From Lytechinus pictus (Eukaryota), in assembly GCF_037042905.1 (NCBI RefSeq), contig NC_087247.1:13082001-13146000 (forward strand): a DNA stretch of 64,000 nt, read 5' to 3'. The stretch's first letter is position 1. Each line of letters begins with the position of its first letter. Shown piece after piece: positions 15,760-56,165 of the stretch. A program made the translations under genes and the position numbers. The notes beneath the pieces were generated by a model. It saw only the letters and a program-made list of their open reading frames with translations. It was not told where the DNA came from and searched no databases.

Positions 15760-17061
15760 ATGGCTGCTGCTCGACCAATAGCTCCTGGGAGGCTCTTGCA
15801 TTTGCTAAGTCTGAGAAGGCAAATCCAAAACGTTCAAGACAGACATGTCATATTGATGGCCTTACTCATCCGTAGACGTCAAAGACATGCAAGGCAAAGA
15901 AGAAGGTGGTGGGTCAAACCCTGGATTGAGAGACGTGTACTGTTTGGACAGTATGATAATCTGATGACGGAGTTGCAGAGAGAATGTCAGGGTGACTTCC
16001 TGAACTACATGAGGATGCCACCAGAAACGTTCCTTGAACTGTTGCAGCGCATCACTACGAGGATAGAGAAGTCCTATCGCTACCGGCAGCCACTGGATCC
16101 TGGGCTCAAACTGGCCATCACCTTGAGATATCTTGCGACCGGCAACAGCTACAAAACCCTGCAGTATGCCTTCCGTGTTGCCCATAATACGATCTCTCTG
16201 TTTATACCAGAGGTGTGCCAGGCCATCATCAGTGAATACCAAGATGAAGTATTTTCCTGTCCAACTACCCCAGATGAATGGAGAGAAGTGGCACGGACTT
16301 ACGCTGACAGATGGAACTTTCATCATGTCTGTGGAGCCTTGGACGGAAAACACGTGGCCATCAGAAATCCACCAGGCTCTGGTACGATCTACTACAACTA
16401 CAAGGGTTTCTACAGCCTCATCCTCTTGGCCCTAGTTGATGGCAATTACAAGTTCCTCTGGGCTGACGTTGGTAATCCCGGTTCATCATCGGATGCCCAG
16501 GTCTTCAACCACAGCCCGCTGAGACGTGGACTGGAGAATGGTACTCTTGGCCTGCCAGATCCAGAGCCCCTGCCAGATGATGACCGAGACACCCCTTACT
16601 TCTTAATTGGGGACGACGCCTTCCCTCTCAGGACATGGATGCAGAAGCCGTACTCCAACCGTGAGCAGACCGACGAGGAGAGAATCTTCAACTACCGTCT
16701 CTCGAGGGCTCGCCGTGTGGTGGAGAACAGCTTTGGCATCCTTGCACATCGCTGGAGATGCTTGTTGAGTACCCTACAGCTTGATCCAGAAAAAGCCAGG
16801 ACAGTCATTATGGCCTGCATGTGCCTCCACAACCTAATGAGAGATCGTTTTCCTGGGCTTCAGAACATTGACGTTGACCGTGAAGATGAGTTGGGCAACC
16901 ACATCCCTGGGGCATAAAGAAACGCAGCAGTTCTGCAGGATGTTGAACGAGTTGGCGGAGGCTACCAGGCAAACAAAGAGGGCAAGAAGCTGAAAACTTA
17001 CCTGAAGCACTACTACAACAGTCCAGTTGGAAGCCTGCCCTGGCAACAACACATGATATAG
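15760..17061 (+). CDS. Harbinger DDE transposase (HARBI1-like), premature TAA at 16915-16917
   Basis: Motifs LAITLRYLATG, GALDGKH, YYNYKG.YS, GDDAFPL, FNYRLSRARRVVENSFG. The frame continues after the TAA through YYNSPVGSLPWQ to TAG at 17061. Confidence 0.9.
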
Positions 17062-17140
17062 ACTGCCACTTGGCGCACTACTTGGGATACAGCACAGACT
17101 CTGCCATAAAAATGGCATGTAAACTTCGATCATGATTTTG

Positions 17141-18095
17141 TGGAATGAATCATTTCAAAGTAGAAATGAATGACCATGTCAACAGTTATTTTAAACATAC
17201 ATTACTTTTACATCGAAAGGTAGTTTGAAATTTAAAAAGTTAACTCTCCTTAATAACATGTGTTTGAAATAAAATAATGAAGGAGAACATGTTTGAAAAA
17301 ATGTGATTTATGAGAATAAAAAAGATGTACAGATATAACATATTTTCTTTTGTCATTAATCATGTTGTTTTAAACATGATATATATTTTTCAAAGACATT
17401 TTATTAACGATAATTAATTTCATTGACCATGTTAATGTTTAAAATAAAGTTTGAAATAAATGTTCCAAAATGGGTCAGTTGTAAATTAAATTGAGAGAGT
17501 TCATCAAGTAACAATAACAATCCAAACAAAAGTTCACTGTTCGTTTTCTTTATTTGACAAGTCTGACAAGTTCAAATGGATGATGATTGATGTGACGGCG
17601 CTGTTGCTGCCTCCTTGATTTAGTGGAATGAATCATTTCAAAGAAGAAATGAATGATCATGTCAACATTTATTTTAAACAAAAATTTCTTTGACAATGAA
17701 ATGTTTGAAATAATAAACGTTGATTCTCCTTTAATAGCATGTATTTGAAATAAAAAAAAAAGAACATTTTTGAAAAAACGTGATTTATGAGAATAAAAAA
17801 GATGTACAGATATAACAAATTTTATATTGTCATTAATCATGTTGTTTTAAAAATTATATATTTTTTCCAAGACATTTTGTTAACGAAAATGAATTCTATT
17901 CACCGAGTAAATGTTTAAAAAAGTTTGAAATAAATGTTCCAAAATAGTCAAATTATAATTTGAGTTGAGAGAGTTCGTCAAGTAACAATAAAAACAATCC
18001 TAACAAAAGTTCACTGTTCATCTTCTTCATCTGACAAGTTCAACTGGGTGATGATTGATGTGTTGGCGCTGTTGCTTCCTCCTTGCTGCTGCTGC
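17141..18095. repeat. ~485-bp tandem duplication in the Harbinger intergenic/ORF2 3' region
   Basis: tggaatgaatcatttcaaag... starts at 17141 and 17624. Confidence 0.75.
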
Positions 18096-19368
18096 TGAAA
18101 GGAGGCCTGCTGTTTTTGCTGGAAGTGGGGGTGCTGCTGCTGGAAGGGGGCCTGTAAATTGGGCTGCTGAAATCCTCCCTGAGGGTTCTGAGGGGTCCAG
18201 GTGCTGCTTGGCCCGAGCATCCCAAGGAAGGAAGCAGGTGGAGCGTTCTGGGTGAAGCCGATCGGCGCTGACTGAGGCCTGAGTGGCTGGATCATCTGGG
18301 GCGAGATACTGGGGTGGTGGAAAGGTGGTCCGCCCGATCCTGGTAGCGGCTCACCAAGTTGAAAGTGTCCCTGGTGAACTCTCACCAGAGGAGTCTTGGA
18401 AGTGGGCGGACGGCCTGCAGCATCCATTCTAGCCAGGCCTGCCTTTCGTCAGCGCCTTGGGTGAGTGCCGCATCCACCTGGCTCCGGATGGCCGTCTGCT
18501 CGGTGGATGTTCTGATGAATTCCAGGAGGGCCTTGTCCACATCGGTGGGCGACCCCCTCTTCTGCCTCTTCTTGGGAGGTGCAGCCCCCTGGCTGGAGAC
18601 TTTGTTGGAGCTGGGTGCTTGGCTGGCATCTGGACCCTGCTCATCTAAACCCTCTTCGTCGGAGGCGGCTTCAGTAATTCGGCCACTGAGGTGGCCCAGT
18701 TGGCAGCCCTGTGACCGATGGACTATGTGCTTCGTCAGAAAACCAAGGTTGTTATTGACCCATCTCTGTCTGGGGGTAAGGACGATGGCCTTCTGACCAC
18801 TCTTCTTTCCAGCGGTCTTCATCTTCCCCAGGATGGTCCTCTGGCTTTTATACCATAGTCTGATGTCGGCCACTGAAAATATACAAAATGTAGAAGCAAG
18901 AAATTAGTCAACATCCAAAAAATTTGCATGTTTAACTAATAAACATCATCAATAAATCGGAATGTGCATATTTTTCAGCTACTACTTACCGGTGACTCCC
19001 AGCTTTTCCGCCATCTCCATGTACTTGCGCTCCTTCTTCTTAGAGTTTTTGAAGTCCACCTTGCTCTTGTCGTAGATGAACTCATTGTCAGCGAAAAACT
19101 CGGCCAGCTCCTGCTCCATGGCTTTGGTGATACCGCAGGTAGCATGGCCATCTATCACGTTGTTCTCATCACTGGCGGCGGCTGGTGGATCTTGGCCCCC
19201 TTCCTGCAGCATTTCATCATCCTCGGTCTGGGCTTCACCAAATTCATTACCCTCATCACCAGCTATGACAGAAGCAGTAGCTTTCTCCTCGGCCACGGGT
19301 ATAGGCTGGGGCCCTTCCTCCTCATCAGGCTGATTTTTCCTCTTTTTCCTTGACTTCTTTGGGGCCAT
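18011..19368 (-). CDS. Harbinger ORF2 Myb/SANT (MADF-like) DNA-binding protein, 2 exons (19368-18990; 18872-18011), disrupted
   Basis: NLS-like MAPKKSRKKRK; EQELAEFFADNEFIYDK...MAEKLGVT|VADIRLWYKSQRT..GK; GT-AG intron 18989-18873; TGA at 18384-18382 and a later frameshift. Confidence 0.8.
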
Positions 19369-19848
19369 GCCGATGCTTGTATTTTGGTTGTGTCTTGTTC
19401 ACTGTAGCAGCGTCTCGTCAGGCATCAGCGGTTGTAATGAAGAAAGTCGCATCGCGTGTCGTATTTATAGGCCAACACCTCGCGCGACAGGTGGTGCGGT
19501 GTGTCGCACAATGGGTCGTAGCCTTGTACGATCGGTTGTAGTAGTCGTACAACGGGTCGCTAGGTCGCGCGACATATGGCGCTACAAAACGCATATGTCG
19601 TGCGACTTGGTCGCATCATCGTTCAACCGTTGCAGCCGTTGTACGACTGTTGCACCCGGAAACATGAAAATAATCGCACGATTACGTCTCACGACTGTTG
19701 TATCCTGGTGCAGTGGTCGTTCACCTCTCGTACGATTTTATATATTGCTTGCGACTCAAAGACAACACTTCTACAACAGGACGGAAAAAATATTTTCGAA
19801 AAAAAAAATTATCGCACGAGTGAGGCGCCAATTGTGAAAGGGGCTTTA

Positions 19849-21298
19849 AACCCCTTTCACAATTGACGTATGTTAAGGTCTTAAAAGCGACTCGGGCTTT
19901 AAGACCTTAACAGACGTACGACCATTTGCGACCTTTTGGTCGTGCAACAGGCATCAATCGCCAGTCATCTCATAAGATCGCACAGAGGCTTTCACAGTTG
20001 CAACAGCTGTCGTACAACAAAAACAATCATTAAAACCCGTTGCACGAGTAAGTCGCTTATGATCCTATTGTGCTCGTGCGATCACATACGAGTGTTGCAC
20101 GAGGGATTGCGAGGGGAACGGTCGCATACATGCGAATGAAACGGTAGTGCAATGTTGCAAGCCGTTGCGATCGGTCTTGCAACAGTCTTATGGCCCATAT
20201 ATTATCGCACCCAGTCGCAAGACAGGTCTCTGTACATGTAGGTCGCTAGCACATGTGCAAGTGTTGAACGACCTCCAGTCGACTAAATGCGACTACTTAA
20301 TTGTGCCACCTCTCGCACCAAGTCGTACAACTTTGAACAACACTCACACGATGATCGCCCGACCGATGGTACGGCCTGATGCGAGTAAAGCCCCTTTCAC
20401 AATTGACGTACGACCTGTTTACGACCGCCTGCAACAGTTTTTTTCTGCTGTTGCACGATCGATCTCTTGGTGACTTGCGAGCACTCGCAGTCGTTGTAGA
20501 CGGTCGCACGAACTCGAGGTGGTCGTGACTGGTCACATCTGAACTTTGAACATGTTCAAAATCCGAACGCGATCAAATACGACCGATTCACTCGCATCAG
20601 CTCGTATCCGGGGTCGTACCATCGGTCGGGCGATCATCGTGGGAGTGTTGTTCAACGTTGCACGACTTGGTGCGAGAGGTGGCACAACTAAGTAGTCGCA
20701 TTTACTCGACTGGAGGTCGTACAACACTTGCACATGTGCTAGCGACCTACATGTACAGAGACCTGTCTTGCAACTGGGTGCGATAATATGATGTGCCATA
20801 AGACTGTTGCAAGACCGATCGCAACGGCTTACAACATTGCACTACCGTTGTGTGCGACGTACCGTTCCCCTCGCAATCCCTCGTGCAACACTCGCATGTG
20901 ATCGCACGAGCACAATAGGATCATAAGCGACTTACTCGTGCAACGGGTTTTACTGGTTGTTTTTGTTGTACGACAGCTGTTGCAACTGTGAAAGCCTCTG
21001 TGCGATATTATGAGATGACTGGCGATTGATGCCTGTTGCAGCCTGTCGCACGACCAAAAGGTCGCAAGTCGTCGTACGTCAATTGTGAAAGGGGCTTAAA
21101 TCAATTGTATTTGATCGCGTTTGGATTTTGAACATGTTCAAATTCAGATGCGACCAGTCACGACCACCTCCGACCACCTCGAATTCGTGCGTCCGTCTAC
21201 AACGACTGCGAGTGCTCGCAAGACACCAAGAGATCGATCATGCAACAACAAGAAAACAAGCTGTTGCAGGCGGTCGTACGTCAATTGTGAAAGGGGCT
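19849..21298. mobile_element. Non-autonomous Harbinger MITE carrying a nested copy of itself
   Basis: Same TIR (A(A/G)CCCCTTTCACAATTG), TAA at 21299-21301, interrupted at 20389-21096. Confidence 0.88.
20389..21096. mobile_element. Nested Harbinger MITE in inverted orientation
   Basis: Perfect TIRs, TAA TSD at 20386-20388 and 21097-21099. The body is the reverse complement of the host MITE. Confidence 0.9.
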
Positions 21299-21301
21299 TA
21301 A

Positions 21302-21989
21302 TTGAGCACACACACCGTCCAGAGACGCTCATGGCGCTAGCGCAGCAGCAGTTCCTTTGAATACAAAATTGTATACACGTACATTACAAACAGCTACTTA
21401 GATATAAATAGAAATCTTAAATCACTACGAAGTACCATCCTCCACCATCACTGAAGTTCCCAGCTACATCCTGGTAGGGTCTGGTGCCCTTGTGTTTGCT
21501 GCACCGTTCACCGACAATTTAAGGGGCAAGCCCGGTCAGCTCAGTACTCACATGAGCTCTAGCAAATAAAGGCACTGTCCAGCCCCCATAGGAAGCCAGT
21601 CAGACCAGCATGTGATGTCAGAGAGTGTACTTTGAATGCATACAAAACAAAATTATGTCTTTAAAAAATAAATGTACATAATATACAGTGTATATAGATT
21701 TAGTTGTGAAGGTATTAAAGGTTGAACAAATAGGTCTTAAGGTGTAGTTTAAATATGTCATGCACTTTAATGGAGCGAAGTGACTGAGGAAGTTGATTCC
21801 ACAACTTGGCCGCAGCATGTGAGAAGGACCTATCCCCCCAAGAATGTCGGGTACGAGGACTTAGAAGCAAATTGTCACATCCAGATCTTAAAAGTACGAG
21901 TTGGATTGTAGGGATGTAGCTCCATGGATGTAGCGTATCTTTAATATATTGTGGCGATATCCCATGAATGGTTCGATGGACAAGTAACA
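21302..21989 (-). mobile_element. 5'-truncated L2/CR1-group LINE (its (TAT)n tail lies at 15300-15318, displaced by the Harbinger cluster)
   Basis: Minus strand reads ...PRTRHSWGDRSFSHAAAKLWNQLPQSLRSIKVHDIFKLHLKTYLF, a typical ORF2 C-terminus. The empty site is visible in the paralogous spacer at ~900 (ggctgcttctgc). Confidence 0.78.
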
Positions 21990-23116: not shown

Positions 23117-23833
23117 AACATTCGGGTGTCATTACACCTAATATTATTGAAATCATTGTACTTATTTTACTGTAAAATGAATTTTGATCTTGTGGTGTGG
23201 AAGCAAAAGTCCATTGGTGGGCAAAGTTCTCGAACAGTTGAATGTATAGATTACTTTCGGAATTTTGCACGCCAAACAGAGTCCTTAATCAATAACTCCG
23301 CAAAAACAAAACGTGAATTTCATCTTTTGATTTATAGGGATTGGTGCTTGTAGGATTTCACAGGGGTGATATTTTGCTTAAAAAACTCCAACAAGCAAAA
23401 GAAAATAAAAACTAAGAAGAAGGTATTCGTTCCAGAAGGGAGGAGAACTATGTCACGAAAAGTTTTACAGCACCCCCTCCCCCCAAAAAAAAAAAATTGA
23501 AAAAAAAAGAGAAAAAGGGTCTTCACATTTGATTATGGTCAACGTGTCCCATTACAAATATTTATTATGGCTCTAAAAAGGGGGATGATCGATATCCACC
23601 ATTACCCCCGGATCCGCCGCAGGTTGTAGGTAGTCAGTCTAAATATAGTGGCCATTGAACTTTTAAACCATCTAATATAGGGGCTTCGACTTATGCCACA
23701 GCTTACGTGACGAAAGGACATATATTACCTCAATTTTTGTACCGATACAATAATCCAGATAATTTATATTCCAACAGAATTGACCATCATTTACCAAAGA
23801 TCTTAGCGAGTAACCGAGAAAACGGGGGCAATC

Positions 23834-24864
23834 ATGACTCATGGATATGGTTTGAAGCTGGCGATCTTGGTGCTCTGCCTGCTTCACTACACTCAACCCA
23901 TCTACTCAGCCCCACTCTCCTCCTACCTGGTATCATTCTTTACTCCTCCTGATGCTGACTCCAACCTACCATTCAATCACATCACCATAAACAACATCAC
24001 TGGAGATGTCTATATTGGAGCAAGGGAGAGACTGTATCAACTCAGCTCAGACCTGACTATCACACACACCGTAGATACCGGATCATGCCCTTCTCCATAT
24101 GAAGATAATACCAATAATAATAGGCTTCTGGTGGTAGCTCCATCACCTGAGGATAAACTCGTCACGTGTGGGGTTGTGATGGGTACTGTGAGACAAGAAG
24201 CTTGAACAATATATCACGTGATGTAGTGAGATATGATGTAATTGATGATCAGCTTGTGGTGACCACATCAGATGCACCCATTGTAGGAGCTGTGGTGTTA
24301 GGTGCTGACCTTCAAGGCAATGGTGTTGGTACTGCAGATGGTGGATTGTACTTATTTACTGGGATCAGTGATGCAACTATTATGAATCCATCTATCTCAA
24401 AGCACAATCTGGTTTACCTACGCCACGACCAAAAGGTAGCCCGACCCTTATCTTCTGCCCCGCGAAACATTTTTAAACATTTGATTCCTTCCATGGAAAA
24501 CATTTATTATTTAATGTCTAGGGAAAACAGTCAGAAGAGTGCATACTTGGGGCGACTGTGCCGTAATTCATTAGATGAACAGTTAGCATTCTACACAGAG
24601 ATAGAAATACAATGTGGGTCTTACAATGAGATTCAGTCAGGTCACATAGGAGCAGCAGGATCCCATCTTGCTGACTCATTCAATATTGATAGTACTGAAG
24701 ATCTTTTGTATGCAATATTTGGAAGTGATATTTCATCTGCTCTGTGCGTCTATAAGATGAGTGATGTAGAGCAGAGTTTCGACGATGCTGCCAAGGGATG
24801 TAGCCAAACAGGAGATAACAGAGGAACGGAGAACAACTACCTTCGTGATAGTTCATGTAATAGA
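23834..24864 (+). pseudogene. Variable exon V4: full length but with a single 1-bp deletion (young pseudo-exon or assembly error)
   Basis: 1031 nt = 344 codons minus 1. It reads tgtggggttgt at ~24166-24176 where V6 has tgtgggggttgt (CGGC). Acceptor at 23777/23778 and GTAAGT donor at 24865 are intact. Confidence 0.75.
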
Positions 24865-27559: not shown

Positions 27560-28594
27560 ATGACTCAAGGATATGGTTTGAAGCTGGCGACCTTAGTCTT
27601 CTGCCTGCTTCACTTCACTCCACCCATCTACTCAGCTACACTCTCCTCCTACCTGGTATCATCCTTTACTCCTCCTGATGCTGACTCGGACCTACCATTC
27701 AACCACATCACCATCAACAATTACATCACCGGTGATGTCTATATTGGAGCAAGGGAGAGACTCTATCAACTCAACACAGCCCTGACTCTCAAACACACAG
27801 TAGATACAGGATCGTGTCGTTCTCCAAATGAAGATAATACCAATAACAATAGGCTTCTAGCGGTAGCTCCATCACCTGAAGATAAACTCATCACTTGTGG
27901 TGGTTGTGATGGTTTCTGTGAGACAAGGAGCTTGACTAATATATCACATGATGTAGTGAGACATGACTCTTCTGGTACTCAGTATGTGGTTACGACATCA
28001 GATACACCTATCGTTGGAGCTGTACTGTTGGGTGCGGACTACCAGGAAGATGGAGTTGGTACTGCAGATGAGAGATTATACTTATTTACGGGGATCAGTG
28101 ATGCATCACTTACCTTTCGATCTATCTCAAAACACAACCTTTTTGATCTTAAGAATGAACAACATGTAACACAACCCCTATCTTCTGCCCCACAAATCAT
28201 TTTCAAATATTTGATTGCTTATAGGGAAAACCTCTTCTATTTCATGTTTAGGGGGAACATACAGAATAATGCACATTTGGGGCGACTTTGCCGTAATTCA
28301 TTAGATGAACAGTTAGCATCCTACACAGAGATACAACTTCAATGTGGATCTCACAATGAGATCCAGTCAGGTCATATCGGAGCAGCAGGATCCCAGTTAG
28401 CTGATTCATTCAGCATGGAGAGTACAGATGACCTTCTGTATGCTGTATTCGGAAGTGAAAGTTCATCTGCTCTATGCATCTACAAGATGAGTGATGTAGA
28501 GCAGAGCATTGACGATGCTGCCAAGGGATGTAGCCGATCAGGAGATACAAGAGGAACGGAGAGCAACTACCTTCAAGATAGTACATGTAATAGT
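27560..28594 (+). CDS. Variable exon V5 (345 codons), intact
   Basis: Paralog of V1/V2. Acceptor tataacag| at 27504/27505; phase-0 donor AGT|GTGAGT at 28594/28595. Confidence 0.9.
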
Positions 28595-29592
28595 GTGAGT
28601 GTTGATGTCAAATGAGCTGAAAATCTTTCTAATCATTTTTACCGTAATTCTTGTAGGTAGTATTATTGATTGAACGTGTCATATGCCTCCGTAAATCAGA
28701 ATGGTAGTTTGATCTCTTCAAAACTGAATGAGTGCAAATTTCGAAATAGGCCTATAGACCTCTATCCAGATTATGGGCAATAAATCGTGGCGGTCCCCTG
28801 TTACACTCTAGTCAGTCATACTAAATATGTCTACACAAGGCATTTAGTTTGCCGTGTACTTTCATGTATGGTAATACATTCACGGTAATAGAAATGCATA
28901 AAATTCAAAACCATGCATTCATTATTATTAAAATGTACTTGATTTTAATGATGACGATTATACAGTATTGTATGACGCTATAATGGAATCAATATAAAAA
29001 ATCACAGAGTTCTAAAAAACTTAGTACTTGAATGTTATGCGTAAAGTTTGTATCTTAATTGGTTAAAGTTTGACATCTGAGAATGATCCACTTCAAATGG
29101 ACTTTCCCTATTCAAGATCAACGCTGTGTTAAGTTAACTCAGTTAAGTTAAGGCAGTTAACTCGCAATCCATCTCCAATCTCTTAGAATTAGCCTAATTG
29201 TTTCCTAATTCGTCGTTTTTTCTTTTCCTAATTCATTAATATATGAATATGATTTCAGTCTGCATTCTACATGCATGCAAAAGCTTTTAAGTGCCATCGA
29301 CTTGTCGAGACGGCGAGGTACGTTTGCTTCGTCGACACATTAAACATTGTATGTGAACATGGCGAGATACGGTATCTCGCCAAGTCAACCAATGAGAAGT
29401 TTTATGGCAACATGACGAGATATGCTTTCTTTTCAAATGGACATATAAAAAGTAAATGGCGAAAATTCATTTTATATCCATGCATAGCGTGGGTGCACCT
29501 GGATGTTGATATCTAACCAGCAGGCCTACACCATTTTCAAATATACCAAAGGACTACCAACTTAAGAGCTTTTTTGTATTACAACCAGTGAC

Positions 29593-32809: not shown

Positions 32810-33552
32810 AACAGTCATTGCGTACTGTTTTTGAAGTTTTTGAACTTTTTACTGAAATAAATTCACATCTTGTGATGTGATAGCAAAAGTCCATTGATAT
32901 ACTAGGTTAAGAGGGCCAATCCCGGGGATGAGGGTTGAGGGTCCCGGGGGTCTTTATCATTTGTATTTAGTCTTCTACATTTCAGTTTATCACAGTAATT
33001 GTTGATGCGCATGATGCACAACAACTAAATCACTTAAGATCTAATTAGACTGTAAAAATTTCCAATGATTTCATACATTTTAGATTTCTGTATTTTAATT
33101 CTAACAGTTTGATTCGTATGATTATACTAAAACAAAAACTTCATTAAAAGATAAACTTAATACGGGCTACTAGTAGGCTTATCTTTGTATGTGGTAAAAA
33201 AAATCATTTTAAGAAAGCATCAAACCTGTTTGTCCACGAGTGGACTCGGCCCTGACGGGTTGTCTTTATTTCGAACATAAATGTTACCTTTATTTAATGA
33301 CAAGATGTTAAATCTAAATATGTAATCGTCTTGATTTAAACTCATTGATGGTTGTAGGTATAGCAATGGTCGCCCTTTGAATTTGTTTTAATAAAATAGG
33401 CGGATTCTACCACAGCTTAAGTGATGAAATGACTCATCTCACTTCCATAATATTTGTACCGGCCGGAGTAATCAGATAATTTATATTCCAACAGAATCAT
33501 CGCCTACATTTACCAAGATCTTGGCGAAATAACCGAGGCAACAGGGACAATC

Positions 33553-34976
33553 ATGACTCAAGGATACGGTTCGAAGCTGGTGATCCTGGTTTTTTGCCTG
33601 CTTCACATCATTCAACCCATCTACTGATCAGCTCCACTCTCCTACCTGGTATCATCCTTAACTCCTCCTGATTCTGACTCGGACTTACCATTCAACCACA
33701 TCACCGGAGATGTCTATATTGGAGCAAGGGAGAGACTCTATCAACTCAACACAGACCTGACTCTCAAACACACAGTAGATACCGGATCGTGTCGTTCTCC
33801 AAATGAAGATAATACCAATAATAATATGCTTCTAGTGCTAGCTCCGTCACCAGAGAGTAAACTCGTCACGTGTGGGGGTTGTGACGGTTTCTGTGAGACA
33901 AGGAGCTTGCATAATATATCAGATGATGTAGTGAGATATGATGTTAGTAATGATCAGCTTGTGGTGACCACATCAGATGCACCCATTGCTGGTGCTGTCG
34001 TGTTGGGTGCTGAATATCAAGATGATGGAGTTGGTACTGCAGATGATGGATTGTACTTATTTACTGGGATCAGTGATCCGTCAGTGAACTTACCATCTAT
34101 CTCAAAGCACAATATTAATGATTTGCGTCATGGACAACGGGTGACACAGCCCCAACCCTCTTCCCCACAAAACGATTTCAAACATTTTGATCCCCTTTAT
34201 GGAAATCCTCTATTTAATGTCTAGGGGGAACAATCAGAAGAGCGCATACTTGGGGCGACTGTGCCGTAATTCATTAGATGAACAGTTAGCATCCCATACA
34301 GAGATACAACTGCAGTGTGGATCTTACAGTGAGATCCAGTCAGGTCATATAGGAGCAGCAGGATCCCAGCTAGCTGATTTTTTCAGCTTGGAAGGCGGTG
34401 CTGCACCATCCCGAGTTTGCCCAATCTCGAGATTTTAGCCCGATCGGCCCTCTTCGCGATTAATCTCGAGATTCAAGAAACCCCGTTCTCCACCATCGCA
34501 AGAAGAGCGATTCCTGCTCGAGCGAGGCATCGATGCGTTATGGTCTGACGCCGTGAATAAATAATCCAGAGTGCGTCGATCTGCACCTACGAATTAGCGC
34601 GATAATTCGTAAAATGGCGCGCTATTTTGCAAATAATCCCAAGATGACTTGGGATTGCAATCTCGAGATTAATCCTACGAACTAGCGCGATAATTGCGTC
34701 TCCATTGCAAATAATCTCGAGATTGTTCAGATCGGGATAATTTGCCGGATCAGAAATAGCGCGCTAATTTGAAAACTCGGGATGGTGCAGACGGCCCTGG
34801 AGAGAACAGATGACCTTCTGTATGCTGTATTCGGAAGTGATAGTTAATCTGCTCTATGCATCTCTAAGATGAGTGATATAGAGCAGAGCTTTGACGATGC
34901 TGCCAGAGGATGTAGCCGAACAGGAGATACAAGAGGAACGGAGAGCAACTTTCTTCAAAATAGTATATGTAACAGA
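33553..34976 (+). pseudogene. Variable exon V6, pseudo-exon
   Basis: ATG at 33553, in-frame TGA at codon 25 (33625-33627), small deletions, frameshift near 34187, MITE at 34393-34798. GTAAGT donor at 34977. Confidence 0.9.
34393..34798. mobile_element. MITE inserted in V6
   Basis: TIR core CTGCACCATCCCGAGTTT, TSD GGA (or TGGA). Interrupts the SLES codons. Confidence 0.82.
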
Positions 34977-37047: not shown

Positions 37048-37462
37048 TGCAGCATCAATGGTGTGGAAACTTTTTCGTAACTAAGGAAATAAAACTTTTT
37101 TTTCTTCATTCACCAAAAAAATGTAACCCTCATTTTTATTTACTCTGTACGTAATACTTTTTAATTTTGTATAGCCAGATTAGATTTAAAAATGGCCGCA
37201 ACCCTCAATTTAATGTCGAATGTTAAAGACTAAAATATTTTTATTTTTTCCCAAAAACGTTAACGCCAAATGAATTTGACTTTTTTGTCCCCCCCCCCAA
37301 AAAAAAAGAGACAGCCAGAAATAAAAGAAGAAGAAAAAGGTTGAAAAGGGAGATATAGAAAAGGAAAAGGAAACATATAAAGGGGAAATAATTAAGAAGA
37401 CACAACTTAAAAAAAAACACTAATAATAATAATAAAAATAAAAAGGAAGAAATAAGAGACAA

Positions 37463-38441
37463 CCCAGATAGCAAAGTATCTGGGGCCCATATGGGAATCA
37501 TGTGGGCCTACTGGGGCCCATATGTACCATGTAAAACCCACGTGTGGACCATATGGTTTGTCCCACCTAGAACCCAGATAATAAAAACCATATGGGCCCC
37601 ATGTGGTATCTATATGGGCGATGTGGTCTTATTTCAGGGTCGACCGAGCCCAGATAGAAACATATAAAACCCATATGGGGCCCATATGGGGTTTTCCACC
37701 TAGAACCCACATAATAAAACCATATGGCCCCGTGTGGTATCTATATGGGCGAAGTGACATAATTATGGATCGACTGAGCCCAGATAGAAACATATAAAAC
37801 CCATATGGGGCCTTTATGGGTTTTCCCACCTAGAACCCACATAATAAAACCATATGGGCCCCATGTGGTATATATATGGGCGAAGTGGCATAATTATGGA
37901 TCGCCTGAGCACATATAGGAACATATATAAAACCCATATGGGGCCCATATGGGTTTTCCCACCTAGAACCCAGATAATAAAACCATATGGGCCCCATGTG
38001 GTATCTATATGGGCGAAGTGGCATAATTATGGATCGACTGAGCCCAGATAGAAACATATAAAACCCATATGGGGCCCATATGGGAGCAATGTGGGCCTGC
38101 CCATATTCAACCCACACTAAACCCACTTGGCCCAAATGGGCCCCACATAGGGTGTACATATGGGTCCCAGATTGGCCAGGTGGGGCCCATATGGGCCCAT
38201 ACATAGCCCAAATGGGCCCCATATGGTTTACATGGGTACGATGTGGGCCTGCCCATATTTACCCCGCGCGAAACCCTGGCCCATATGGGCCCCAGACGGG
38301 GTGTGCGGTGCAAAAAACACAAGGGGCCCAGATGGGCCCATACATAGCCCACATGGGCAACCCATATGGGGCCCACATTTTAGCCCAGATAAGCCCATGC
38401 ACAAGTAACCCATATGGGCCCCATATATTTTGCTCACTGGG
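37463..38441. mobile_element. TIR element built of CCCATATGGG palindromes and ~130-bp subrepeats
   Basis: Ends CCCAGATAGCAAAGTATCTGGGGCCCATATGGG and (reverse complement) CCCAGTGAGCAAAATATATGGGGCCCATATGGG. Confidence 0.7.
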
Positions 38442-39780
38442 TTTGTTTAAGACTAGCGCCAAACGTGTTTAGGGTATGTGTGTTTTCCCCGGGTCATATT
38501 CTGGCCAAAATGTGTAAATAAAGCCCCCGCGAAAAATTTGTTTAGGGGTTATTTTGCACACAGAGAAAAAAAATCGTTTAGGGGTGTAATAAGGTCGCGC
38601 ATGTGTACAGCAATACATTTGACTGCCCTTCTGGGGGGGGGGGGGTAGGTCCATTGATAAAGTTACTGAAAGAGGTTATAGTTCATTCGTTGGTCTCAAG
38701 ATTGTTCCAGTTCACAGTTTGCAAATTTCACTTTTACTTAATCATGTCAATGCATCCTGACATATATATATTTTTTTTTTGGGGGGGGGGGGTGGAGCTA
38801 GAACCTTCTCCATATGAATTAGGTGTGACCAAAATTTACACGTGACAAAAAAGGCTCTTATGCAATCAACACTCGAGATAAGCCAGCAGCAAAAATGATC
38901 AGCTAGACGGAAAGGAGAAGAAAAAGATGGATAAGGAAAGCGGAGATAGAGAGGGGAAAATAAGAAAAATAAAGAAAAGGGAACGAGAGAAGAAAGAACA
39001 GCATATAACGATGAAAAAACAGATCCAGGAGCGGAGGAGCCTTTATTCCGCCCCCCCCCCCAAAAAAAAAGAGAGGGGGAGAGAGAAAGAGAGAGAGGGA
39101 TCGAGAGAGACTCTGAGACAGAAACTGAAGAGAATTAGAAAAGGAGGGGAAAGGAGCTAAGGAAGGATCATTTTTTAAATGAAACATAAAGAAAAAGGGG
39201 AGGAATTATTAGGAACAGAAAATTGGCAGGCTCTCGATCTTATAGCTTTATAATTATGTACATATTTTTATTGATTTTAATGTTTATATCTTTTTTGTAA
39301 ACCTATGATCGGCCGGTGATGGGAGAATTACCATTAAAAGTGTCCGTTTTGGCTATATCCGTGACCACTGCACTCGGACTGTACTCATCAATTAATGGTT
39401 TTTTAATTTTCTTTTTTTTTTTGTATTTTATTGTGAAACTCGGCATGTCTGCAATTAATTGGGACTAGTCAGGGTCTAGTATAGAGATCCCAGGTCCCAG
39501 CAATGGCGTGATTTCCTTCACACTCACAGGAGAAAAGAGCAAATAAACCTCGGAACGGTTTGTGGTATTTGTATCGGCCTAGCCCTAGATAGAAAAATCA
39601 GTCCTCTTCTCCGTCCACGCATTATTTCCATTGAGATTTCGCCACCATGAAGAGACATCATCAAACTACGATCATGGGGGATACACGAATACATACTGTA
39701 TTTTCCGACGAAGGTCTAGACATGTGTCTCCGTGATAATTTGATTTTCTTTTAAAATTTCTCTGCTCCTTTCCGTTGCAG

Positions 39781-39996
39781 GTTAACATAGAACCACCTGA
39801 TGCAGTTTTATGTACAGCTTTTCAAATAGAAGATGGTTCAACTACTAGGTACTACCAGTATGCCAGTGGAGTGAATCCCCTCTCTCCTTCACTCATCATC
39901 CCTCTTGGTGCTGCATCTCCCACTTCCATTGTAACAACCATAGAGAGACAACATACTCTTGCAATCATAGGAGATACACAAGGAAATCTTCAAAAG
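39781..39996 (+). CDS. Constant exon C1a (Sema continuation VNIEPPDAVLC...GDTQGNLQK), phase 0-0
   Basis: Polypyrimidine tract + ttgcag| acceptor, AAG|gttagt donor, 72 codons. Carries a plexin-like 'T.AIIGDTQGNLQK' motif. Confidence 0.88.
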
Positions 39997-40051
39997 GTTA
40001 GTGTGTTCTCGATCATAAAGTGAAAGGACTTACCTTTTATTTTCCTTGCAG

Positions 40052-40270
40052 GTTTATAGCATAGAACCGCCCGATTCAGTTCTATGTACAGCGTATCTAA
40101 TATTAGATGGTACTGGGTATCTGTACTACCAGTATGCCAGTGGAGTGAATGCCCTTCCTGCATCACTCGTCATCCCTCTTGGTGCTGCATCTCCCACCTC
40201 AATAGTAACAACCATAGAGAGACAACATACCATTGCATGCATAGGAGATACACAAGGAAACCTTCAAAAG
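40052..40270 (+). CDS. Constant exon C1b (tandem paralog of C1a, VYSIEPPDSVLC...GDTQGNLQK), phase 0-0
   Basis: ccttgcag| acceptor, AAG|gttagg donor, 73 codons, open. Differs from C1a at 16 of 73 aligned positions. Confidence 0.88.
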
Positions 40271-40479
40271 GTTAGGGTTGCATATCTGTGTACTACTTAA
40301 TCAATGGGAAAGTTTTCAGCAACTCTTTTCACTGATTTAAGTTCAAATTATGGTTAGGCTTATCTATTTCAATCTAATATTTGAATCAATTTGACATGAA
40401 AATAGGCTATTGATCCAACTTCTCAATCTTTCAAATTTTTAGACCAATGGTATTAAAAATAATTAATCATCGCTATGAA

Positions 40480-41065
40480 AGGACAAGTCCACCCCAACAA
40501 AAAGTTGATTTGAATAAAAAGAGAAAGATCTAACAAGCAAAACAATGAAAACTTCATCAAAATCGGATGTACAATAAGAAAGTTATTTCATTTTAAAGTT
40601 TTGCTTAATTTTACAAAACAGTTTATATGCACATCCTGGTCGGTATGGAAATGAGGAGACTGATGACATCATCCACTCACTATTTCTTTTGTATTTTATT
40701 ATATGAAATATTTTAATTTTCTCCTTATATTCAAGTGAAACAACGATTAATTTCTCAATGAACATATGGAATTAGCATCGTTTAATACTATATGTTTTAG
40801 TCAAGGTGGTCGATCTTTATCATCAAATCTGTAAAAGTAAAATATTGTGTAATTCAAACAATAAAAAACAAAAGAAATAGTGAGTGATGGACATCATCGA
40901 CTGTCTCATTGCATGTCACTGAGATGTGCAGATCACTGTTTATCAAAAATAAGCAAAACTTTAAAATGTCATAACTTTCTTATTTTACATCCGATTTTGA
41001 TGAAATTTTTAGCGTTATGTTAGTTTCAAATTCAAATCAACATTTTTCTGGGGTGGACTTGGCCT
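40480..41065. mobile_element. Kolobok-like MITE, copy 1
   Basis: TIR AGGACAAGTCCACCCC, TGAA/TTAA flanks. Same family as 57871 and 60636, in the opposite orientation. Confidence 0.72.
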
Positions 41066-42377
41066 TTAATGAATAAAGGGGCAGTTGTATATGAATAGCA
41101 TTCTTCAAAAATGACCTTGCAGGCTTGATCCATTGATTGCCATACTCCAAAGGTTTACATGGAGAACATTGAGTTTTTTTCTCATTTCCGCTGGAATGGG
41201 TTACTTTTTAGGAAGAAATCCCTAAACATGGAGTATGATTTTATACTGGAAAATCCCTAAACATGGCCCCAATTTTTAGATACTGGCCTTAAACATGGGT
41301 CCATATTCTCCTCCATTGTATTTGGTGCAAATACGAAATGACCTTACATTTTGGGTGATAACCTTTTCTTTTTTTTCCCCAAGGGGAAAATCCCCCCCCC
41401 CCCCCTTTGGAGAATCCTGGATCCGCCCCTGTAGCAAATCCCTAATAATATACCTTTTTAGCTAAAATGACCTGTAAATATGGGTATTGGTTTTAGACCT
41501 TCAGCCACACACCCCCTTCCAACCCCCCCTACCAGAAGATTTTAAAAGGTAAAAGGTGGGAGTTGCTCCTACCCTGTTTGGCATTCAATGACTTAAGTGA
41601 TAGAGCAACGCTTATCTGGCACTGTACAGTGGCTGCCAGACCAAAGATCAATTGGGCAAAATGAGATTTTGGAATATTTCTGATTTCTGTTTCGAACAAT
41701 AAAATATGGATTTCTTCTTCATTTTGTTAAGAGCTATCAAAACATTTTGATTTTTAAAGAATCTTTCTCCCTATCCCTAATTATGTACATGTCTCTTGAT
41801 AACTCTACACATTGTTTTGTAAAATGTATTTTCTCATTTTCATTGATATACCGGTGAATAACAAAAAGTTTACACCTAAATAATGTATTTAATCAGAGAA
41901 AGAAAAAAATTGTACTATTTCATTGTTATACATCAAAGGAATGGCCTAATTCCAAAAATTTGTTTAATGATTTTGTACGCAATCAGTTCATCCTTTCATG
42001 AATATGGAAAATATAATGGCAGAAGAAAATAATAAGTAACCAATAAACAAATAATGAAAATTGTTTATTATGAGATTGTCAAAAGAGCTGCCATTATTTT
42101 AGAAGGAAAGAGACAACTTTAAGTTATTTGCTTTCGCTGAAATATTATTAATTAATACGTTAGTATACAGCAAGGTACAATTCCTTTGACTTTACCCATT
42201 AATATCTCAGATTTCATTGTGTAATGAATCATGTAAAATCACTATGTAACATTTGATATTGAAATGGTGCGATGCATACTGAACAGGCCCAATAGAATCA
42301 ATAGTCCATTGTGATGTTCATCTACACAACTTTCACTGACTTGACCTGTCTTATTTCGAACATGCTTGTTTCATCAG

Positions 42378-42515
42378 GTGAATATTGTTAACAGCACATT
42401 TGGCTATGTCTACGAGACAGTTCCTCTTGGAAGTGGATCTGTTTTGCGAGAGCTATTTCTTGATGAATCTACAGAGCAGTTAACATTAGCCACAACTTCA
42501 GATCAAGGCTCACAG
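42378..42515 (+). CDS. Constant exon C2 (end of Sema: VNIVNSTFGYVYETVPLGSGSVLRELFLDESTEQLTLATTSDQGSQ)
   Basis: tcatcag| ... CAG|gtgagt, 46 codons, phase 0-0. Confidence 0.85.
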
Positions 42516-43065
42516 GTGAGTTGTAATATTGGAGAACTGTAAAGCGCATCTAGAGCAGTTTTGATTGATTATGCATTATATAAGCACCAGTTTATTATTA
42601 TCATTGTTAATATTATTATTATTATCATCATTGTTATCATCATTATTATTATTGTTATCATTGTTATTATTGTTATTATACAAGATATAAAATATGCAAA
42701 AAAATACAATTCCTGTTGTGATTAAACAAAAGTTAGGGGCATACAATTAATATTTGGGTATTTATAAATAATGATTTTTTATCTAAATGGAGAACAATGT
42801 ATATAAAGAGCATGTAGTGCGATAAAAGAAATTATTTTACCCAGAGGCAGATATCAGAGCATATTTTTGAAGAAGTATATTATATTCATTATATATAGGC
42901 CTGCCTTTTATAAAGCATGAGGAACATTGGACTGATATACAAGTATACACACAGATGCGGATCTAGATTTTGCTGGGGGGGGGGGGCAAGGATCCTTCAG
43001 CCCCCCCCCCCCTCCCCCGTGGATCCAATCCTGATTTAACCTTTAATCTTTGTGATATTATACAG

Positions 43066-43181
43066 GTTCTTAAACTAAATTTGGCAAACTGTGGCCAATA
43101 CCAAACCTGTGATGAGTGCATTGGTGGCAATGGAGGAAACGATGGAGACCCTTACTGTGGATGGTGTACTTTAGAAAAAAG
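43066..43181 (+). CDS. Constant exon C3 (PSI1: NCGQYQTCDECIG...DPYCGWCTLEKR)
   Basis: Classic PSI motif DPYCGWC. tacag| ... AG|gtgaga, phase 0-2. Confidence 0.92.
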
Positions 43182-53136: not shown

Positions 53137-53410
53137 GTAAGTACATGAAATGTAATTGCAAATTTTGATCTACACAGTGAAAACCCTCATACAGCCGAGT
53201 TGTTCTCTTGAAGTATTAAACAGGCCTAACATTTTTTTGTTGTTGATAATTTTGGACTTATTCTAGATTTTGATATTGGGGATAATTTAAGGGCAAGGTC
53301 AGTGTTCCATATGGCACATTTACTAAAGAAAATTCATGGAAATAAGAATGGCACAACAAATCTCCAAGGCAAATGAGAGGGGTATCAAGGCTCTCAAAGG
53401 GCAATCATGT

Positions 53411-56165
53411 ATAAAAAGTTATAATTGGTTGTACATAAAGAGCTTAAGAATAAAAGTTACAATCGGTTGTACATAAAGAGCTTAAGAATAAAAAGTTACA
53501 ATCAGTTGTACATAAAGAGCTTAAGAATAAAAAGTTACAATCAGTTGTACATAAAGAGCTTAAAAATAAAAAGTTATAATTGGTTGTACATAAAGAGCTT
53601 AAGAATAAAAAGTTACAATCGGTTGTACATAAAGAGCTTAAGAATAAAAAGTTACAATCGGTTGTACATAAAGAGCTTAGGAATAAAAAGTTACAATTGG
53701 TTGTACATAAAGAGCTTATGAATAAAAAGTTACAATCGGTTGTACATAAAGAGCTCAGGAATAAAAAGTTACGATCGGTTGTACATAAAGAGCTGAAGAA
53801 TAAAAAGATACAATTGGTTGTACATAAAGAGCTTATGAATAAAAAGTTACAATCGGTTGTACATAAAGAGCTTAAGAATAAAAAGTTACAATCGGTTGTA
53901 CATAAAGAGCTTAAGAATAAAAAGTTACAATTGGTTGTACATAAAGAGCTTATGAATAAAAAGTTACAATCGGTTGTACATAAAGAGCTCAGGAATAAAA
54001 AGTTACGATCGGTTGTACATAAAGAGCTTAAGAATAAAAAGTTACAATCGGTTGTACATAAAGAGCTTATGAATAAAAAGTTACGATCGGTTGTACATAA
54101 AGAGCTTAAGAATAAAAAGTTACAATCGGTTGTACATAAAGAGCTTAAGAATAAAAAGTTACAATTGGTTGTACATAAAGAGCTTATGAATAAAAAGTTA
54201 CAATCGGTTGTACATAAAGAGCTTATGAATAAAAAGTTACAATCGGTTGTACATAAAGAGCTCAGGAATAAAAAGTTACGATCGGTTGTACATAAAGAGC
54301 TTAAGAATAAAAAGTTACAATCGGTTGTACATAAAGAGCTTATGAATAAAAAGTTACAATCGGTTGTACATAAAGAGCTCAGGAATAAAAAGTTACAATT
54401 GGTTGTACATAAAGAGCTTATGAATAAAAAGTTACAATCGGTTGTACATAAAGAGCTTATGAATAAAAAGTTACAATCGGTTGTACATAAAGAGCTTAAG
54501 AATAAAAAGTTACAATCGGTTGTACATAAAGAGCTTATGAATAAAAAGTTACGATCGGTTGTACATAAAGAGCTTAAGAATAAAAAGTTACAATCGGTTG
54601 TACATAAAGAGCTCAGGAATAAAAAGTTACGATCGGTTGTACATAAAGAGCTTATGAATGAAAAGTTACAATTGGTTGTACATAAAGAGCTTAAGAATAA
54701 AAAGTTACAATCGGTTGTACATAAAGAGCTTAAGAATAAAAAGTTACAATCGGTTGTACATAAAGAGCTCAGGAATAAAAAGTTACGATCGGTTGTACAT
54801 AAAGAGCTTAAGAATAAAAAGTTACAATTGGTTGTACATAAAGAGCTTATGAATAAAAAGTTACAATCGGTTGTACATAAAGAGCTCAGGAATAAAAAGT
54901 TACAATCGGTTGTACATAAAGAGCTTATGAATGAAAAGTTACAATCAGTTGTACATAAAGAGCTTAAGAATAAAAAGTTACAATCGGTTGTACATAAAGA
55001 GCTTAAGAATAAAAAGTTACGATCGGTTGTACATAAAGAGCTTAAGAATAAAAAGTTACAATCGGTTGTACATAAAGAGCTTAAGAATAAAAAGTTACGA
55101 TCGGTTGTACATAAAGAGCTTAAGAATAAAAAGTTACGATCGGTTGTACATAAAGAGCTTAAGAATAAAAAGTTACGATCGGTTGTACATAAAGAGCTTA
55201 AGAATAAAAAGTTACGATCGGTTGTACATAAAGAGCTTAAGAATAAAAAGTTACGATCGGTTGTACATAAAGAGCTTATGAATAAAAAGTTACAATCGGT
55301 TGTACATAAAGAGCTTAAGAATAAAAAGTTACGATCGGTTGTACATAAGGAGCTTAAGAATAAAAAGTTACGATCGGTTGTACATAAAGAGCTTAAGAAT
55401 AAAAAGTTACAATCGGTTGTACATAAAGAGCTCAGGAATAAAAAGTTACAATCGGTTGTACATAAAGAGCTCAGGAATAAAAAGTTACAATCAGTTGTAC
55501 ATAACGAGCTTAAGAATAAAAAGTTACAATCGGTTGTACATAAAGAGCTTAAGAATAAAAAGTTACAATCGGTTGTACATAAAGAGCTTAAGAATAAAAA
55601 GTTACGATCGGTTGTACATAAAGAGCTTAAGAATAAAAAGTTACAATCGGTTGTACATAAAGAGCTTAAGAATAAAAAGTTACGATCGGTTGTACATAAA
55701 GAGCTTAAGAATAAAAAGTTACGATCGGTTGTACATAAAGAGCTTAAGAATAAAAAGTTACGATCGGTTGTACATAAAGAGCTTAAGAATAAAAAGTTAC
55801 AATCGGTTCTACATAAAGAGCTTAAGAATAAAAAGTTACAATCGGTTGTACATAAAGAGCTTAAGAATAAAAAGTTACGATCGGTTGTACATAAAGAGCT
55901 TAAGAATAAAAAGTTACAATTGGTTGTACATAAAGAGCTTAAGAATAAAAAGTTACGATCGGTTGTACATAAAGAGCTTATGAATGAAAAGTTACAATTG
56001 GTTGTACATAAAGAGCTTATGAATAAAAAGTTACAATCGGTTGTACATAAAGAGCTTAAGAATAAAAAAGTTACAATAGGTTGTACATAAAGAGCTTAAG
56101 AATAAAAAGTGACAATCAGTTGTACATAAAGAGCTTATGAATGAAAAGTTACGATCGGTTGTACA
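53411..56165. repeat. 39-bp minisatellite (~70 copies) in intron C5-C6
   Basis: Unit ATAAAAAGTTACAATCGGTTGTACATAAAGAGCTTAAGA with a few recurring variants. Confidence 0.97.

What the first reader, a model, noticed from the sequence alone, without database searches (positions are those of the whole stretch)
39781..40270. Second diversity layer: duplicated exon C1a/C1b, probably forced to be mutually exclusive by steric hindrance
Seen: two intact phase 0-0 paralogous exons separated by only 55 nt (39997-40051). A branch-point-like CTTAC has its A at 40032, 35 nt from the upstream donor. Differences concentrate in one patch (FQIEDGSTTR vs YLILDGTGYL). Established: a donor-to-branch distance under ~50 nt blocks splicing and enforces mutual exclusion, as in alpha-tropomyosin exons 2/3. 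Inference: this doubles Sema-domain diversity combinatorially with the V exons.
Basis: partly seen in the sequence, partly recalled or inferred. Interest (0 to 1): 0.8.

Follow-up and report, generated by a model that had tools for sequence, protein, structure and literature searches.

The report
Duplicated alternative exon in urchin plexin
A sea-urchin (Lytechinus pictus) plexin receptor gene carries two tandem copies of one Sema-domain exon only 55 bases apart; RNA data show that the first copy is spliced on its own and that the second is also expressed, which fits either/or use, but that use and the proposed "intron too short" mechanism are not yet proven.

Summary
C1a (39781-39996) and C1b (40052-40270) are intact, phase 0-0 paralogous exons. 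They are 86% identical in DNA and 79% in protein, and a 55-nt GT..AG spacer separates them. The best branch-point-like A (40032) lies 35 nt from the C1a donor.

The gene is a Lytechinus pictus plexin-B-like gene with several alternative first exons (V exons).

- **C1a alone:** transcriptome contigs from two studies join C1a directly to the next exon (42378), skipping C1b. The current RefSeq model does the same.
- **C1b expressed:** one transcriptome holds a mismatch-free 146-nt contig that starts exactly at the C1b acceptor.
- **Tandem use:** no C1a-C1b join was seen. In that same run the C1a-to-C2 contig runs unbranched through the junction.
- **Family norm:** every homologue has one copy of this segment.
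- **Selection:** both copies evolve under purifying selection outside one hypervariable hairpin.

A C1b-to-C2 junction was not observed, C1b looks like a minor form, and the steric mechanism is untested. Human 56-nt introns do splice.

The first stage had noted this same stretch once more (s1-313798).

The parts
39781..39996 (+). Exon C1a: 72 codons, phase 0-0. Encodes the distal blade-5 extrusion and blade 6 of the Sema propeller. This is the major form.
   Evidence: X4 holds a 237-nt contig covering the whole exon without mismatch, joined to 42378. It is 100% identical to residues 348-419 of RefSeq XP_063952485.1.
39997..40051 (+). 55-nt GT..AG spacer between the two copies. About 33 nt are ancestral downstream intron and about 22 nt are a duplicated acceptor region.
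   Evidence: The paralogue's downstream intron begins with the same gttagtg...ataaagtgaaagga. No RNA contig was listed on it.
40028..40038 (+). ACTTACCTTTT: the best branch-point-like motif (A at 40032) and the start of the pyrimidine tract. It is also complementary to the donors of both C1a and C1b.
   Evidence: positions. inverted repeats I8 (10 of 11 bases) and I12 (9 of 10 bases). The branch point has not been mapped.
40052..40270 (+). Exon C1b: 73 codons, phase 0-0. Paralogue of C1a and the minor form.
   Evidence: X1 holds a 146-nt contig at 40052-40197 with no mismatch, starting at the first exon base, and X1 holds 63% of the exon's sampled words. The protein is identical in XP_054750171.1.
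42378..42515 (+). Exon C2: 46 codons, end of blade 6 and most of blade 7. It is the acceptor used by the C1a donor.
   Evidence: Joint 39996 to 42378 (GT..AG) in X1 and X4, and joint 42515 to 43066. Sequence.
43066..43180 (+). Exon C3: last propeller strand and the start of the PSI domain.
   Evidence: Pfam PSI match.
27560..28600 (+). V5, the alternative first exon used by the RefSeq model (signal peptide plus Sema blades 1-5). One of six V-type exons upstream.
   Evidence: V5 joined to C1a translates exactly to residues 1-419 of XP_063952485.1. The other V copies are at about 2573-3604, 6380-7440, 10046-11269 (split), 23633-24864 and 33392-34976 (split).

Best explanation
C1a and C1b are tandem-duplicated alternative cassette exons of a Lytechinus pictus plexin-B-like gene whose 5' end is a cluster of alternative first exons.

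Each copy encodes the same structural unit: the distal part of the blade-5 'extrusion', including a hypervariable beta-hairpin, plus blade 6 of the seven-bladed Sema propeller. A mature mRNA carries one of them. C1a is the major choice and C1b a minor, probably regulated one.

The choice is made when a V-exon donor pairs with either the C1a or the C1b acceptor.
- If C1a is chosen, its donor must go on to C2. The only branch sites available for the C1b acceptor lie 20-42 nt from that donor (35 nt for the best one), too close for U1 and U2 complexes to assemble on the same 55-nt intron.
- If C1b is chosen, C1a is removed as part of the long V-C1b intron.

**Shown:** the anatomy, the C1a-to-C2 junction, the presence of C1b in RNA, and coding constraint on both copies.

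**Inferred:** the C1b-to-C2 junction, strict exclusivity, and the steric mechanism.
For: - **Anatomy:**
- **C1a alone:** a C1a-to-C2 joint with GT..AG ends appears in X1 (depth 35) and X4 (depth 14), which come from two studies. X4 has one 237-nt contig that is mismatch-free over all of C1a. RefSeq XP_063952485.1 is V5-C1a-C2.
- **C1b in RNA:** the X1 contig 40052-40197 has no mismatch and starts at the first exon base. Depth is zero in both flanking introns, so it is spliced RNA rather than DNA.
- **V exons:** their ends differ in the last base, A versus T. That would break an assembly graph exactly at the exon edge, as is seen for both C1a and C1b.
- **No tandem join:** in X1, where C1b is expressed, the contig carrying the C1a 3' end runs unbranched through the junction into C2, and no 39996-to-40052 joint is listed.
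- **Family norm:** every homologue has one C1 segment directly followed by C2.
- **Structure:** the AlphaFold model (pLDDT 87.8) places C1 as extrusion end plus blade 6. In the tandem version one copy falls below pLDDT 50.
- **Selection:** dS = 0.30. Omega is 0.18 outside the patch and 0.89 inside it. Each branch has 4 synonymous and 2 non-synonymous changes outside the patch.
- **Intron size:** the 44 resolved introns of the family measure 339-5094 nt, so 55 nt is an extreme outlier.
- **Precedent:** a donor-to-branch distance under 50 nt is the accepted criterion for steric interference and applies to 9% of human mutually exclusive exon clusters (PMC5740500).
Against: - No junction from C1b to C2, or from a V exon to C1b, was seen. 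The C1b contig stops at 40197.
- C1b was found in only one run, is absent from X4, and is absent from the current RefSeq annotation. Two raw RNA runs had almost no reads on the gene.
- Fifteen joints were not displayed, and assembled contigs drop rare variants. A low-level C1a-C1b join cannot be excluded.
- Both exons are multiples of three, so double inclusion or double skipping stays in frame and is not removed by nonsense-mediated decay.
- The branch point is not mapped.
- The minimal intron of sea urchins is unknown (PMC2721852), and a human 56-nt intron is spliced with SPF45 (PMC8363638).
- The short spacer is a direct by-product of where the duplication broke. It is not necessarily a selected feature.
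Confidence: 0.5

Rival explanations
1. C1a is the constitutive exon. C1b is a young, rarely used duplicate whose occasional inclusion is splicing noise, so there is no functional second diversity layer.
For: The only current RefSeq model uses C1a. X4 has no C1b. Only one run holds C1b, at about a third of the C1a depth. No C1b-C2 junction was seen.
Against: - C1b is intact, with canonical splice sites.
- Outside the patch it has 4 synonymous and 2 non-synonymous changes on its own branch, where neutral evolution would give about three non-synonymous per synonymous (p about 0.04).
- Its protein is identical in two L. pictus assemblies, whereas C1a differs at 15 of 72 residues.
- dS = 0.30 means the copy has survived for a long time.
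Confidence: 0.25
2. The two exons are used either/or, but the exclusion is not steric. It could arise from competition between acceptors, regulated repression, RNA pairing, or simply loss of misfolded protein carrying two copies.
For: - Short introns of about 56 nt can be spliced in humans (PMC8363638).
- The motif at 40028-40038 can pair with both donors.
- The region 39960-40090 folds better than shuffles, z = -2.8, with the C1b pyrimidine tract paired.
- The tandem protein models poorly.
Against: - No docking/selector pair beyond what the splice-site consensus itself gives was found.
- The fold signal is weak and was not tested by covariation.
- The geometry of 35 nt meets the accepted steric criterion (PMC5740500).
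Confidence: 0.18
3. Both exons are normally included in tandem, as in the older model XP_054750171.1, giving a Sema domain with a repeated blade.
For: XP_054750171.1 contains C1a' followed by C1b. Both exons are phase 0-0, so the frame is kept.
Against: - That model also fuses two V exons and has been replaced.
- The C1a-to-C2 joint is seen in two runs, and no tandem joint is listed.
- No homologue has two copies.
- In the tandem model the first copy has pLDDT 36-47. That copy has no alignment depth, which weakens the point.
Confidence: 0.07

Closest known systems
Alpha-tropomyosin exons 2/3 and other mutually exclusive exons enforced by branch-point proximity (steric interference)
   Same: Two tandem homologous exons of equal phase. 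The only plausible branch site for the second exon lies under 50 nt (here 35 nt) from the donor of the first. The first exon is seen spliced past the second.
   Different: Exclusivity and the branch point are not demonstrated here. The organism is an echinoderm whose minimal intron is unknown. Here the whole intron is only 55 nt. In alpha-tropomyosin (from memory) the intron is longer and the branch point sits unusually far from the acceptor.
Tandem exon duplication giving alternative cassettes in general (Letunic/Kondrashov-type duplicated exons; human survey PMC5740500)
   Same: Same length class, same phase, sequence-similar exons that encode the same structural element, with differences focused in a surface patch.
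   Different: In most human clusters at least one exon length is not a multiple of three, so joint inclusion shifts the frame. Here both lengths are multiples of three, so that safeguard is absent.
Clustered variable-first-exon receptor genes (protocadherin alpha/gamma, UGT1A)
   Same: The gene has several promoter-proximal first exons, each with its own signal peptide, that splice to shared constant exons. C1a/C1b would add a second choice point.
   Different: Those clusters have no duplicated alternative exon at the start of the constant region. The protein here is a plexin, and use of more than one V exon is shown only indirectly.
Echinoderm plexin-B expansion (PMC6374515, citing Whittaker 2006)
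   Same: The gene belongs to the expanded echinoderm plexin-B-like group. About 20 paralogues are found in this genome.
   Different: Among the paralogues examined, only this gene has the duplicated C1 exon.

Membership tests
Mutually exclusive exons by steric hindrance (alpha-tropomyosin 2/3 type) | Adjacent homologous exons of the same phase that encode the same protein segment | tested here: met
   216 and 219 nt, phase 0-0, 79% amino-acid identity. Both align to the single segment found in homologues.
Mutually exclusive exons by steric hindrance (alpha-tropomyosin 2/3 type) | Donor-to-branch-point distance in the intervening intron below about 50 nt | tested here: inconclusive
   The intron is 55 nt. 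Candidate branch A residues lie 20, 35 and 42 nt from the donor. The geometry is met by sequence, but the branch point is not mapped and the threshold for sea urchins is unknown (PMC2721852).
Mutually exclusive exons by steric hindrance (alpha-tropomyosin 2/3 type) | Mature transcripts contain exactly one of the two exons | tested here: inconclusive
   C1a-only transcripts are shown in two runs and in RefSeq. C1b is seen in RNA in one run. No tandem joint is listed. No C1b-C2 joint was seen.
Mutually exclusive exons by steric hindrance (alpha-tropomyosin 2/3 type) | Lengthening the intron allows the two exons to be spliced together | not testable with these tools
   Needs a minigene experiment.
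Mutually exclusive exons by U2/U12 splice-site incompatibility | One flanking intron is U12-type (donor consensus RTATCCTT) | tested here: not met
   The donors are GTTAGT and GTTAGG, the V donors are GTAAGT or GTGAGT, and all acceptors end in AG.
Mutually exclusive exons policed by frame shift and nonsense-mediated decay | Exon length not divisible by three, so joint inclusion or joint skipping creates a premature stop | tested here: not met
   216 and 219 nt. The tandem reading has no stop, as in XP_054750171.1.
Mutually exclusive exons by competing RNA structures (docking and selector sites) | One docking site that is complementary to a selector next to each exon | tested here: inconclusive
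   The only shared complementarity is ACTTACCTTTT with both donors, 10-11 nt long, which the splice-site consensus itself explains. No covariation data are available.
Plexin | N-terminal seven-bladed Sema domain followed by PSI and IPT repeats and a cytoplasmic plexin GAP domain | tested here: met
   Pfam Sema and PSI match the window's exons. The full RefSeq product carries Sema, PSI, TIG/IPT and plexin cytoplasmic families. The model matches plexin A and B ectodomains at E = 1e-33, TM 0.75.

The most novel reading that the evidence does not exclude
C1 is a second, independently chosen specificity cassette of a polymorphic recognition receptor. Its hypervariable hairpin sits in the Sema 'extrusion', a region that Sema-family proteins use to bind ligands, co-receptors or partners. 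It differs as much between two L. pictus haplotypes (15 of 72 residues in C1a) as between the two exon copies. Together with the alternative V exons, this would give a plexin-based, combinatorially and allelically diversified surface receptor in a sea urchin, for example for self/non-self, pathogen or gamete/larval recognition.
Probability: 0.15. Interest if true: 0.8.

Novelty: new member of a known kind. Interest (0 to 1): 0.45.

Why it matters
If both exons are used either/or, this is a clean invertebrate-deuterostome example of exon choice forced by intron geometry. L. pictus embryos can be injected and stable lines now exist, so it can be tested with a simple spacer-lengthening minigene.

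It would also show that the clustered plexin gene varies its ligand-facing Sema surface at two independent points. The strong allelic divergence of C1a hints at diversifying selection on a receptor family whose expansion in echinoderms has no known function.

If C1b turns out to be noise, the locus is just a recent exon duplication and of little interest.

Tried and rejected
- **Raw RNA-seq runs X7 and X8.** About 6% of each run was read, and there was essentially no depth on the gene, so no junction counts are possible.
- **Protein search with C1b alone.** No candidates were found, so no transcript-derived fragments are in the collection.
- **Searches with full-length relatives.** Only single-copy homologues came back, with no isoform pair differing in C1 and no L. 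variegatus orthologue.
- **Contig ends near the C1a-C2 joint as a sign of a merging C1b-C2 path.** Rejected. The paralogue 97 kb upstream has the same last 9 nt of C1 and the same first 35 nt of C2, and it is expressed in X4.
- **Adding contig depths to test whether C2 equals C1a plus C1b.** Rejected as unreliable. C3 has twice the depth of C2 in the same run.
- **Intron-size survey of the species.** The 44 introns obtained all come from one gene family and do not define the species minimum.
- **AlphaFold of the tandem form.** The low confidence of the first copy is confounded by its lack of alignment depth.
- **U12 incompatibility and decay-based policing.** Both are excluded by sequence.
- **RNA-structure control.** Nothing convincing was found.

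Full report
**1. The observation**

- C1a is 39781-39996 (216 nt). C1b is 40052-40270 (219 nt).
- Each is preceded by a pyrimidine tract ending in ttgcag. C1a is followed by GTTAGT and C1b by GTTAGG.
- Both translate without stops in phase 0-0, to 72 and 73 residues.
- They are 86% identical in DNA, with similarity running a few bases into the flanks. They are 79% identical in protein (E = 5e-30 in a search of the whole genome).
- The spacer, 39997-40051, is 55 nt.
- The motif CTTAC has its A at 40032, which is 35 nt from the donor G and 19 nt from the acceptor.
- The only other branch-like A residues are 20 and 42 nt from the donor, so no possible branch site reaches 50 nt.
- Eight of the 16 amino-acid differences lie in the ten-residue patch FQIEDGSTTR / YLILDGTGYL.

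**2. What gene this is**

The window holds six copies of a roughly 1-kb first exon. Each begins with an ATG and a signal peptide and encodes the first 344 or so residues of a Sema domain. Two of the copies are split by insertions.

Downstream lie constant exons, including PSI repeats.

The current RefSeq protein XP_063952485.1, 'plexin-B1-like [Lytechinus pictus]', is reproduced exactly by V5 (27560-28600) joined to C1a, followed by C2 and the later exons. The window is therefore L. pictus.

The product carries the Sema, PSI, IPT/TIG and plexin cytoplasmic families. An AlphaFold model of residues 1-520 (pLDDT 87.8) matches plexin A and B ectodomains at E = 1e-33.

The genome holds about 20 paralogues with a C1-like exon. 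One lies 97 kb upstream and the rest form a cluster on another chromosome. Each has a single copy. The expansion of plexins in echinoderms is already known (PMC6374515).

**3. RNA evidence**

The raw runs had almost no reads on the gene.

The contig sets X1 and X4 come from different studies. Both behave as transcriptomes, with depth on exons, none on introns, and spliced joints. They show the following.

- **(a) C1a skips C1b.** A joint from 39996 to 42378 with GT..AG ends appears in both runs. In X4 it lies on one 237-nt contig that is mismatch-free over the whole of C1a.
A joint from 42515 to 43066 defines C2 (42378-42515), which lies between C1b and the PSI exon.
- **(c) C1b is in RNA.** X1 holds a 146-nt contig, without mismatch, that covers 40052-40197 and begins at the first base of C1b. 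Both flanking introns have zero depth. A second index search found 63% of the C1b words in X1 and in no other run of this species.
- **(d) No tandem join.** No joint from 39996 to 40052 is listed.

Two indirect points come from how such contigs are built.
- In X1, the contig that carries the 3' end of C1a runs on, unbranched, through the junction into C2. A C1a-C1b junction at a depth like that of C1b (about 11) would have created a branch at 39996.
- Contigs start exactly at the first base of C1a (both runs) and of C1b (X1). This is expected if V exons ending in A (V2-V4) and in T (V1, V5) are both spliced to them.

These are inferences, not junction reads. Fifteen joints were not displayed, and contigs lose rare forms.

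No C1b-to-C2 junction was seen, because the C1b contig stops at 40197.

**4. Gene models**

The superseded model XP_054750171.1 fuses two V exons and contains a C1a-like exon followed by C1b in tandem. It is clearly an over-prediction, and its successor uses C1a alone.

It is still informative, because it comes from another haplotype.
- Its C1b is identical to the window's (73 of 73 residues).
- The 1438 residues from C2 onward differ at 6 positions.
- Its C1a differs at 15 of 72 positions, mostly in and around the patch.

**5. Is each copy a working coding exon?**

- Between C1a and C1b, dS is 0.30 and dN is 0.13.
- dS is similar along the exon, but omega is 0.89 in the variable third and 0.18 elsewhere. 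The low divergence of the rest is therefore constraint, not recent gene conversion.
- With the upstream paralogue as outgroup, each branch has 4 synonymous and 2 non-synonymous changes outside the patch. Neutral decay of either copy would give roughly three non-synonymous changes per synonymous one (p about 0.04 per branch; pooled Fisher p = 0.004).
- C1a, C1b and the paralogue's exon are equidistant (33, 33 and 32 differences). The exon duplication is therefore about as old as the gene duplication.

**6. What the exon encodes**

In the model, a 16-residue helix at 310-325 follows strand 5C. This corresponds to the 'extrusion' of Sema domains described for RON and others (PMC3405059).
- C1 (348-419) covers the distal extrusion and the four strands of blade 6.
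- The variable patch (361-370) forms a beta-hairpin with a conserved DG turn, just after a conserved cysteine.
- C2 completes blade 6 and gives most of blade 7.

Extrusions vary between Sema proteins and take part in ligand, co-receptor or partner contacts (PMC3405059). Blade 6 of Drosophila PlexA contacts Sema1b in the side-on complex (PMC7327498). Blades 5-6 of PlexinC1 pack against IPT2 (PMC7181871).

All homologues, from S. purpuratus to distant plexins, have this segment once, directly followed by C2. Folding the tandem form leaves the first copy at pLDDT 36-47 while the second takes the canonical place. That copy has no alignment depth, so this is only weak support.

**7. Mechanism**

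The spacer is a by-product of the duplication. Its first 33 or so nucleotides match the intron that follows the single exon in the paralogue, and the remainder is a copy of the acceptor region.

Its geometry meets the accepted criterion for steric interference, a donor-to-branch distance under 50 nt, which applies to 9% of human mutually exclusive clusters (PMC5740500).

The other known safeguards are absent.
- The introns are U2-type.
- Both exon lengths are multiples of three.
- No docking/selector pairing was found beyond the trivial complementarity of ACTTACCTTTT to both donors.

Forty-four resolved introns of paralogous genes measure 339-5094 nt, with a median of 700. A 55-nt intron is far outside what this family uses.

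Against the steric reading:
- The minimal intron of sea urchins is not known (PMC2721852).
- A 56-nt human intron is spliced with the help of SPF45 (PMC8363638).
- The branch point is unmapped.
- Steric hindrance cannot prevent the skipping of both exons.

**8. Verdict**

The best reading (about 0.5) is a pair of alternative cassette exons in which C1a is the major form and C1b a minor one. The 55-nt spacer prevents tandem use.

The main rival (about 0.25) is that C1b is a little-used duplicate.

Either/or use by another mechanism (about 0.18) and routine tandem inclusion (about 0.07) are less likely.

This is a new member of a known kind. Its interest lies mainly in its place within the clustered plexin gene and in the allelic hypervariability of C1a.

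Noticed in passing
window 39781-39996, compared with XP_054750171.1 (P0159 residues 721-792): C1a differs at 15 of 72 residues between two L. pictus assemblies. C1b is identical, and the next 1438 residues differ at only 6. The V exons of that model are also only about 86% identical to the nearest V in the window. The variable end of the gene looks hyper-polymorphic or structurally different between haplotypes.
   Followed up: partly
window 40472-41141 (intron between C1b and C2): A repeat with very high depth in all four runs (up to about 1e5 in the contig sets) and reads on both strands in the raw RNA. It has many variants and loose ends. It is probably an abundant, transcribed interspersed repeat and is not part of the gene's exons.
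   Followed up: no
window 53296-56095: A 39-nt tandem satellite of about 70 copies at about 95% identity, inside an intron of the constant region. It accounts for the strong GC and AT skew of that segment.
   Followed up: no
window 3599-3616 and 28589-28606: The V exons end in two in-frame donors 6 nt apart (AGT|GTAAGT|GTAAAT in V1, AGT|GTGAGT|GTTGAT in V5). The RefSeq model uses the distal one in V5, which adds Val-Ser.
   Followed up: partly
G000:C3:13024942-13026960 (L003, L032), 97 kb upstream of C1a: A paralogous gene with a single C1 exon (76% amino-acid identity) and a C2 that is 96% identical in DNA. It is expressed in X4. Its intron after C1 begins like the 55-nt spacer.
   Followed up: partly
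window 39992-40002, 40028-40038 and 40266-40275: The branch-point-like element ACTTACCTTTT resembles the 5' end of U1 snRNA and can pair with the donor of C1a (10 of 11 bases) and of C1b (9 of 10 bases). The 131-nt region around the spacer folds better than shuffles (z = -2.8).
   Followed up: partly
window 37200-38500: A degenerate repeat region with long open frames on both strands (recurring PYGPHMG-like peptides), just upstream of the constant region.
   Followed up: no
window 15700-21400: A GC-rich block (up to 52% GC, against about 37% elsewhere) with long overlapping open frames on both strands, lying between V3 and V4. It may be an inserted mobile element.
   Followed up: no
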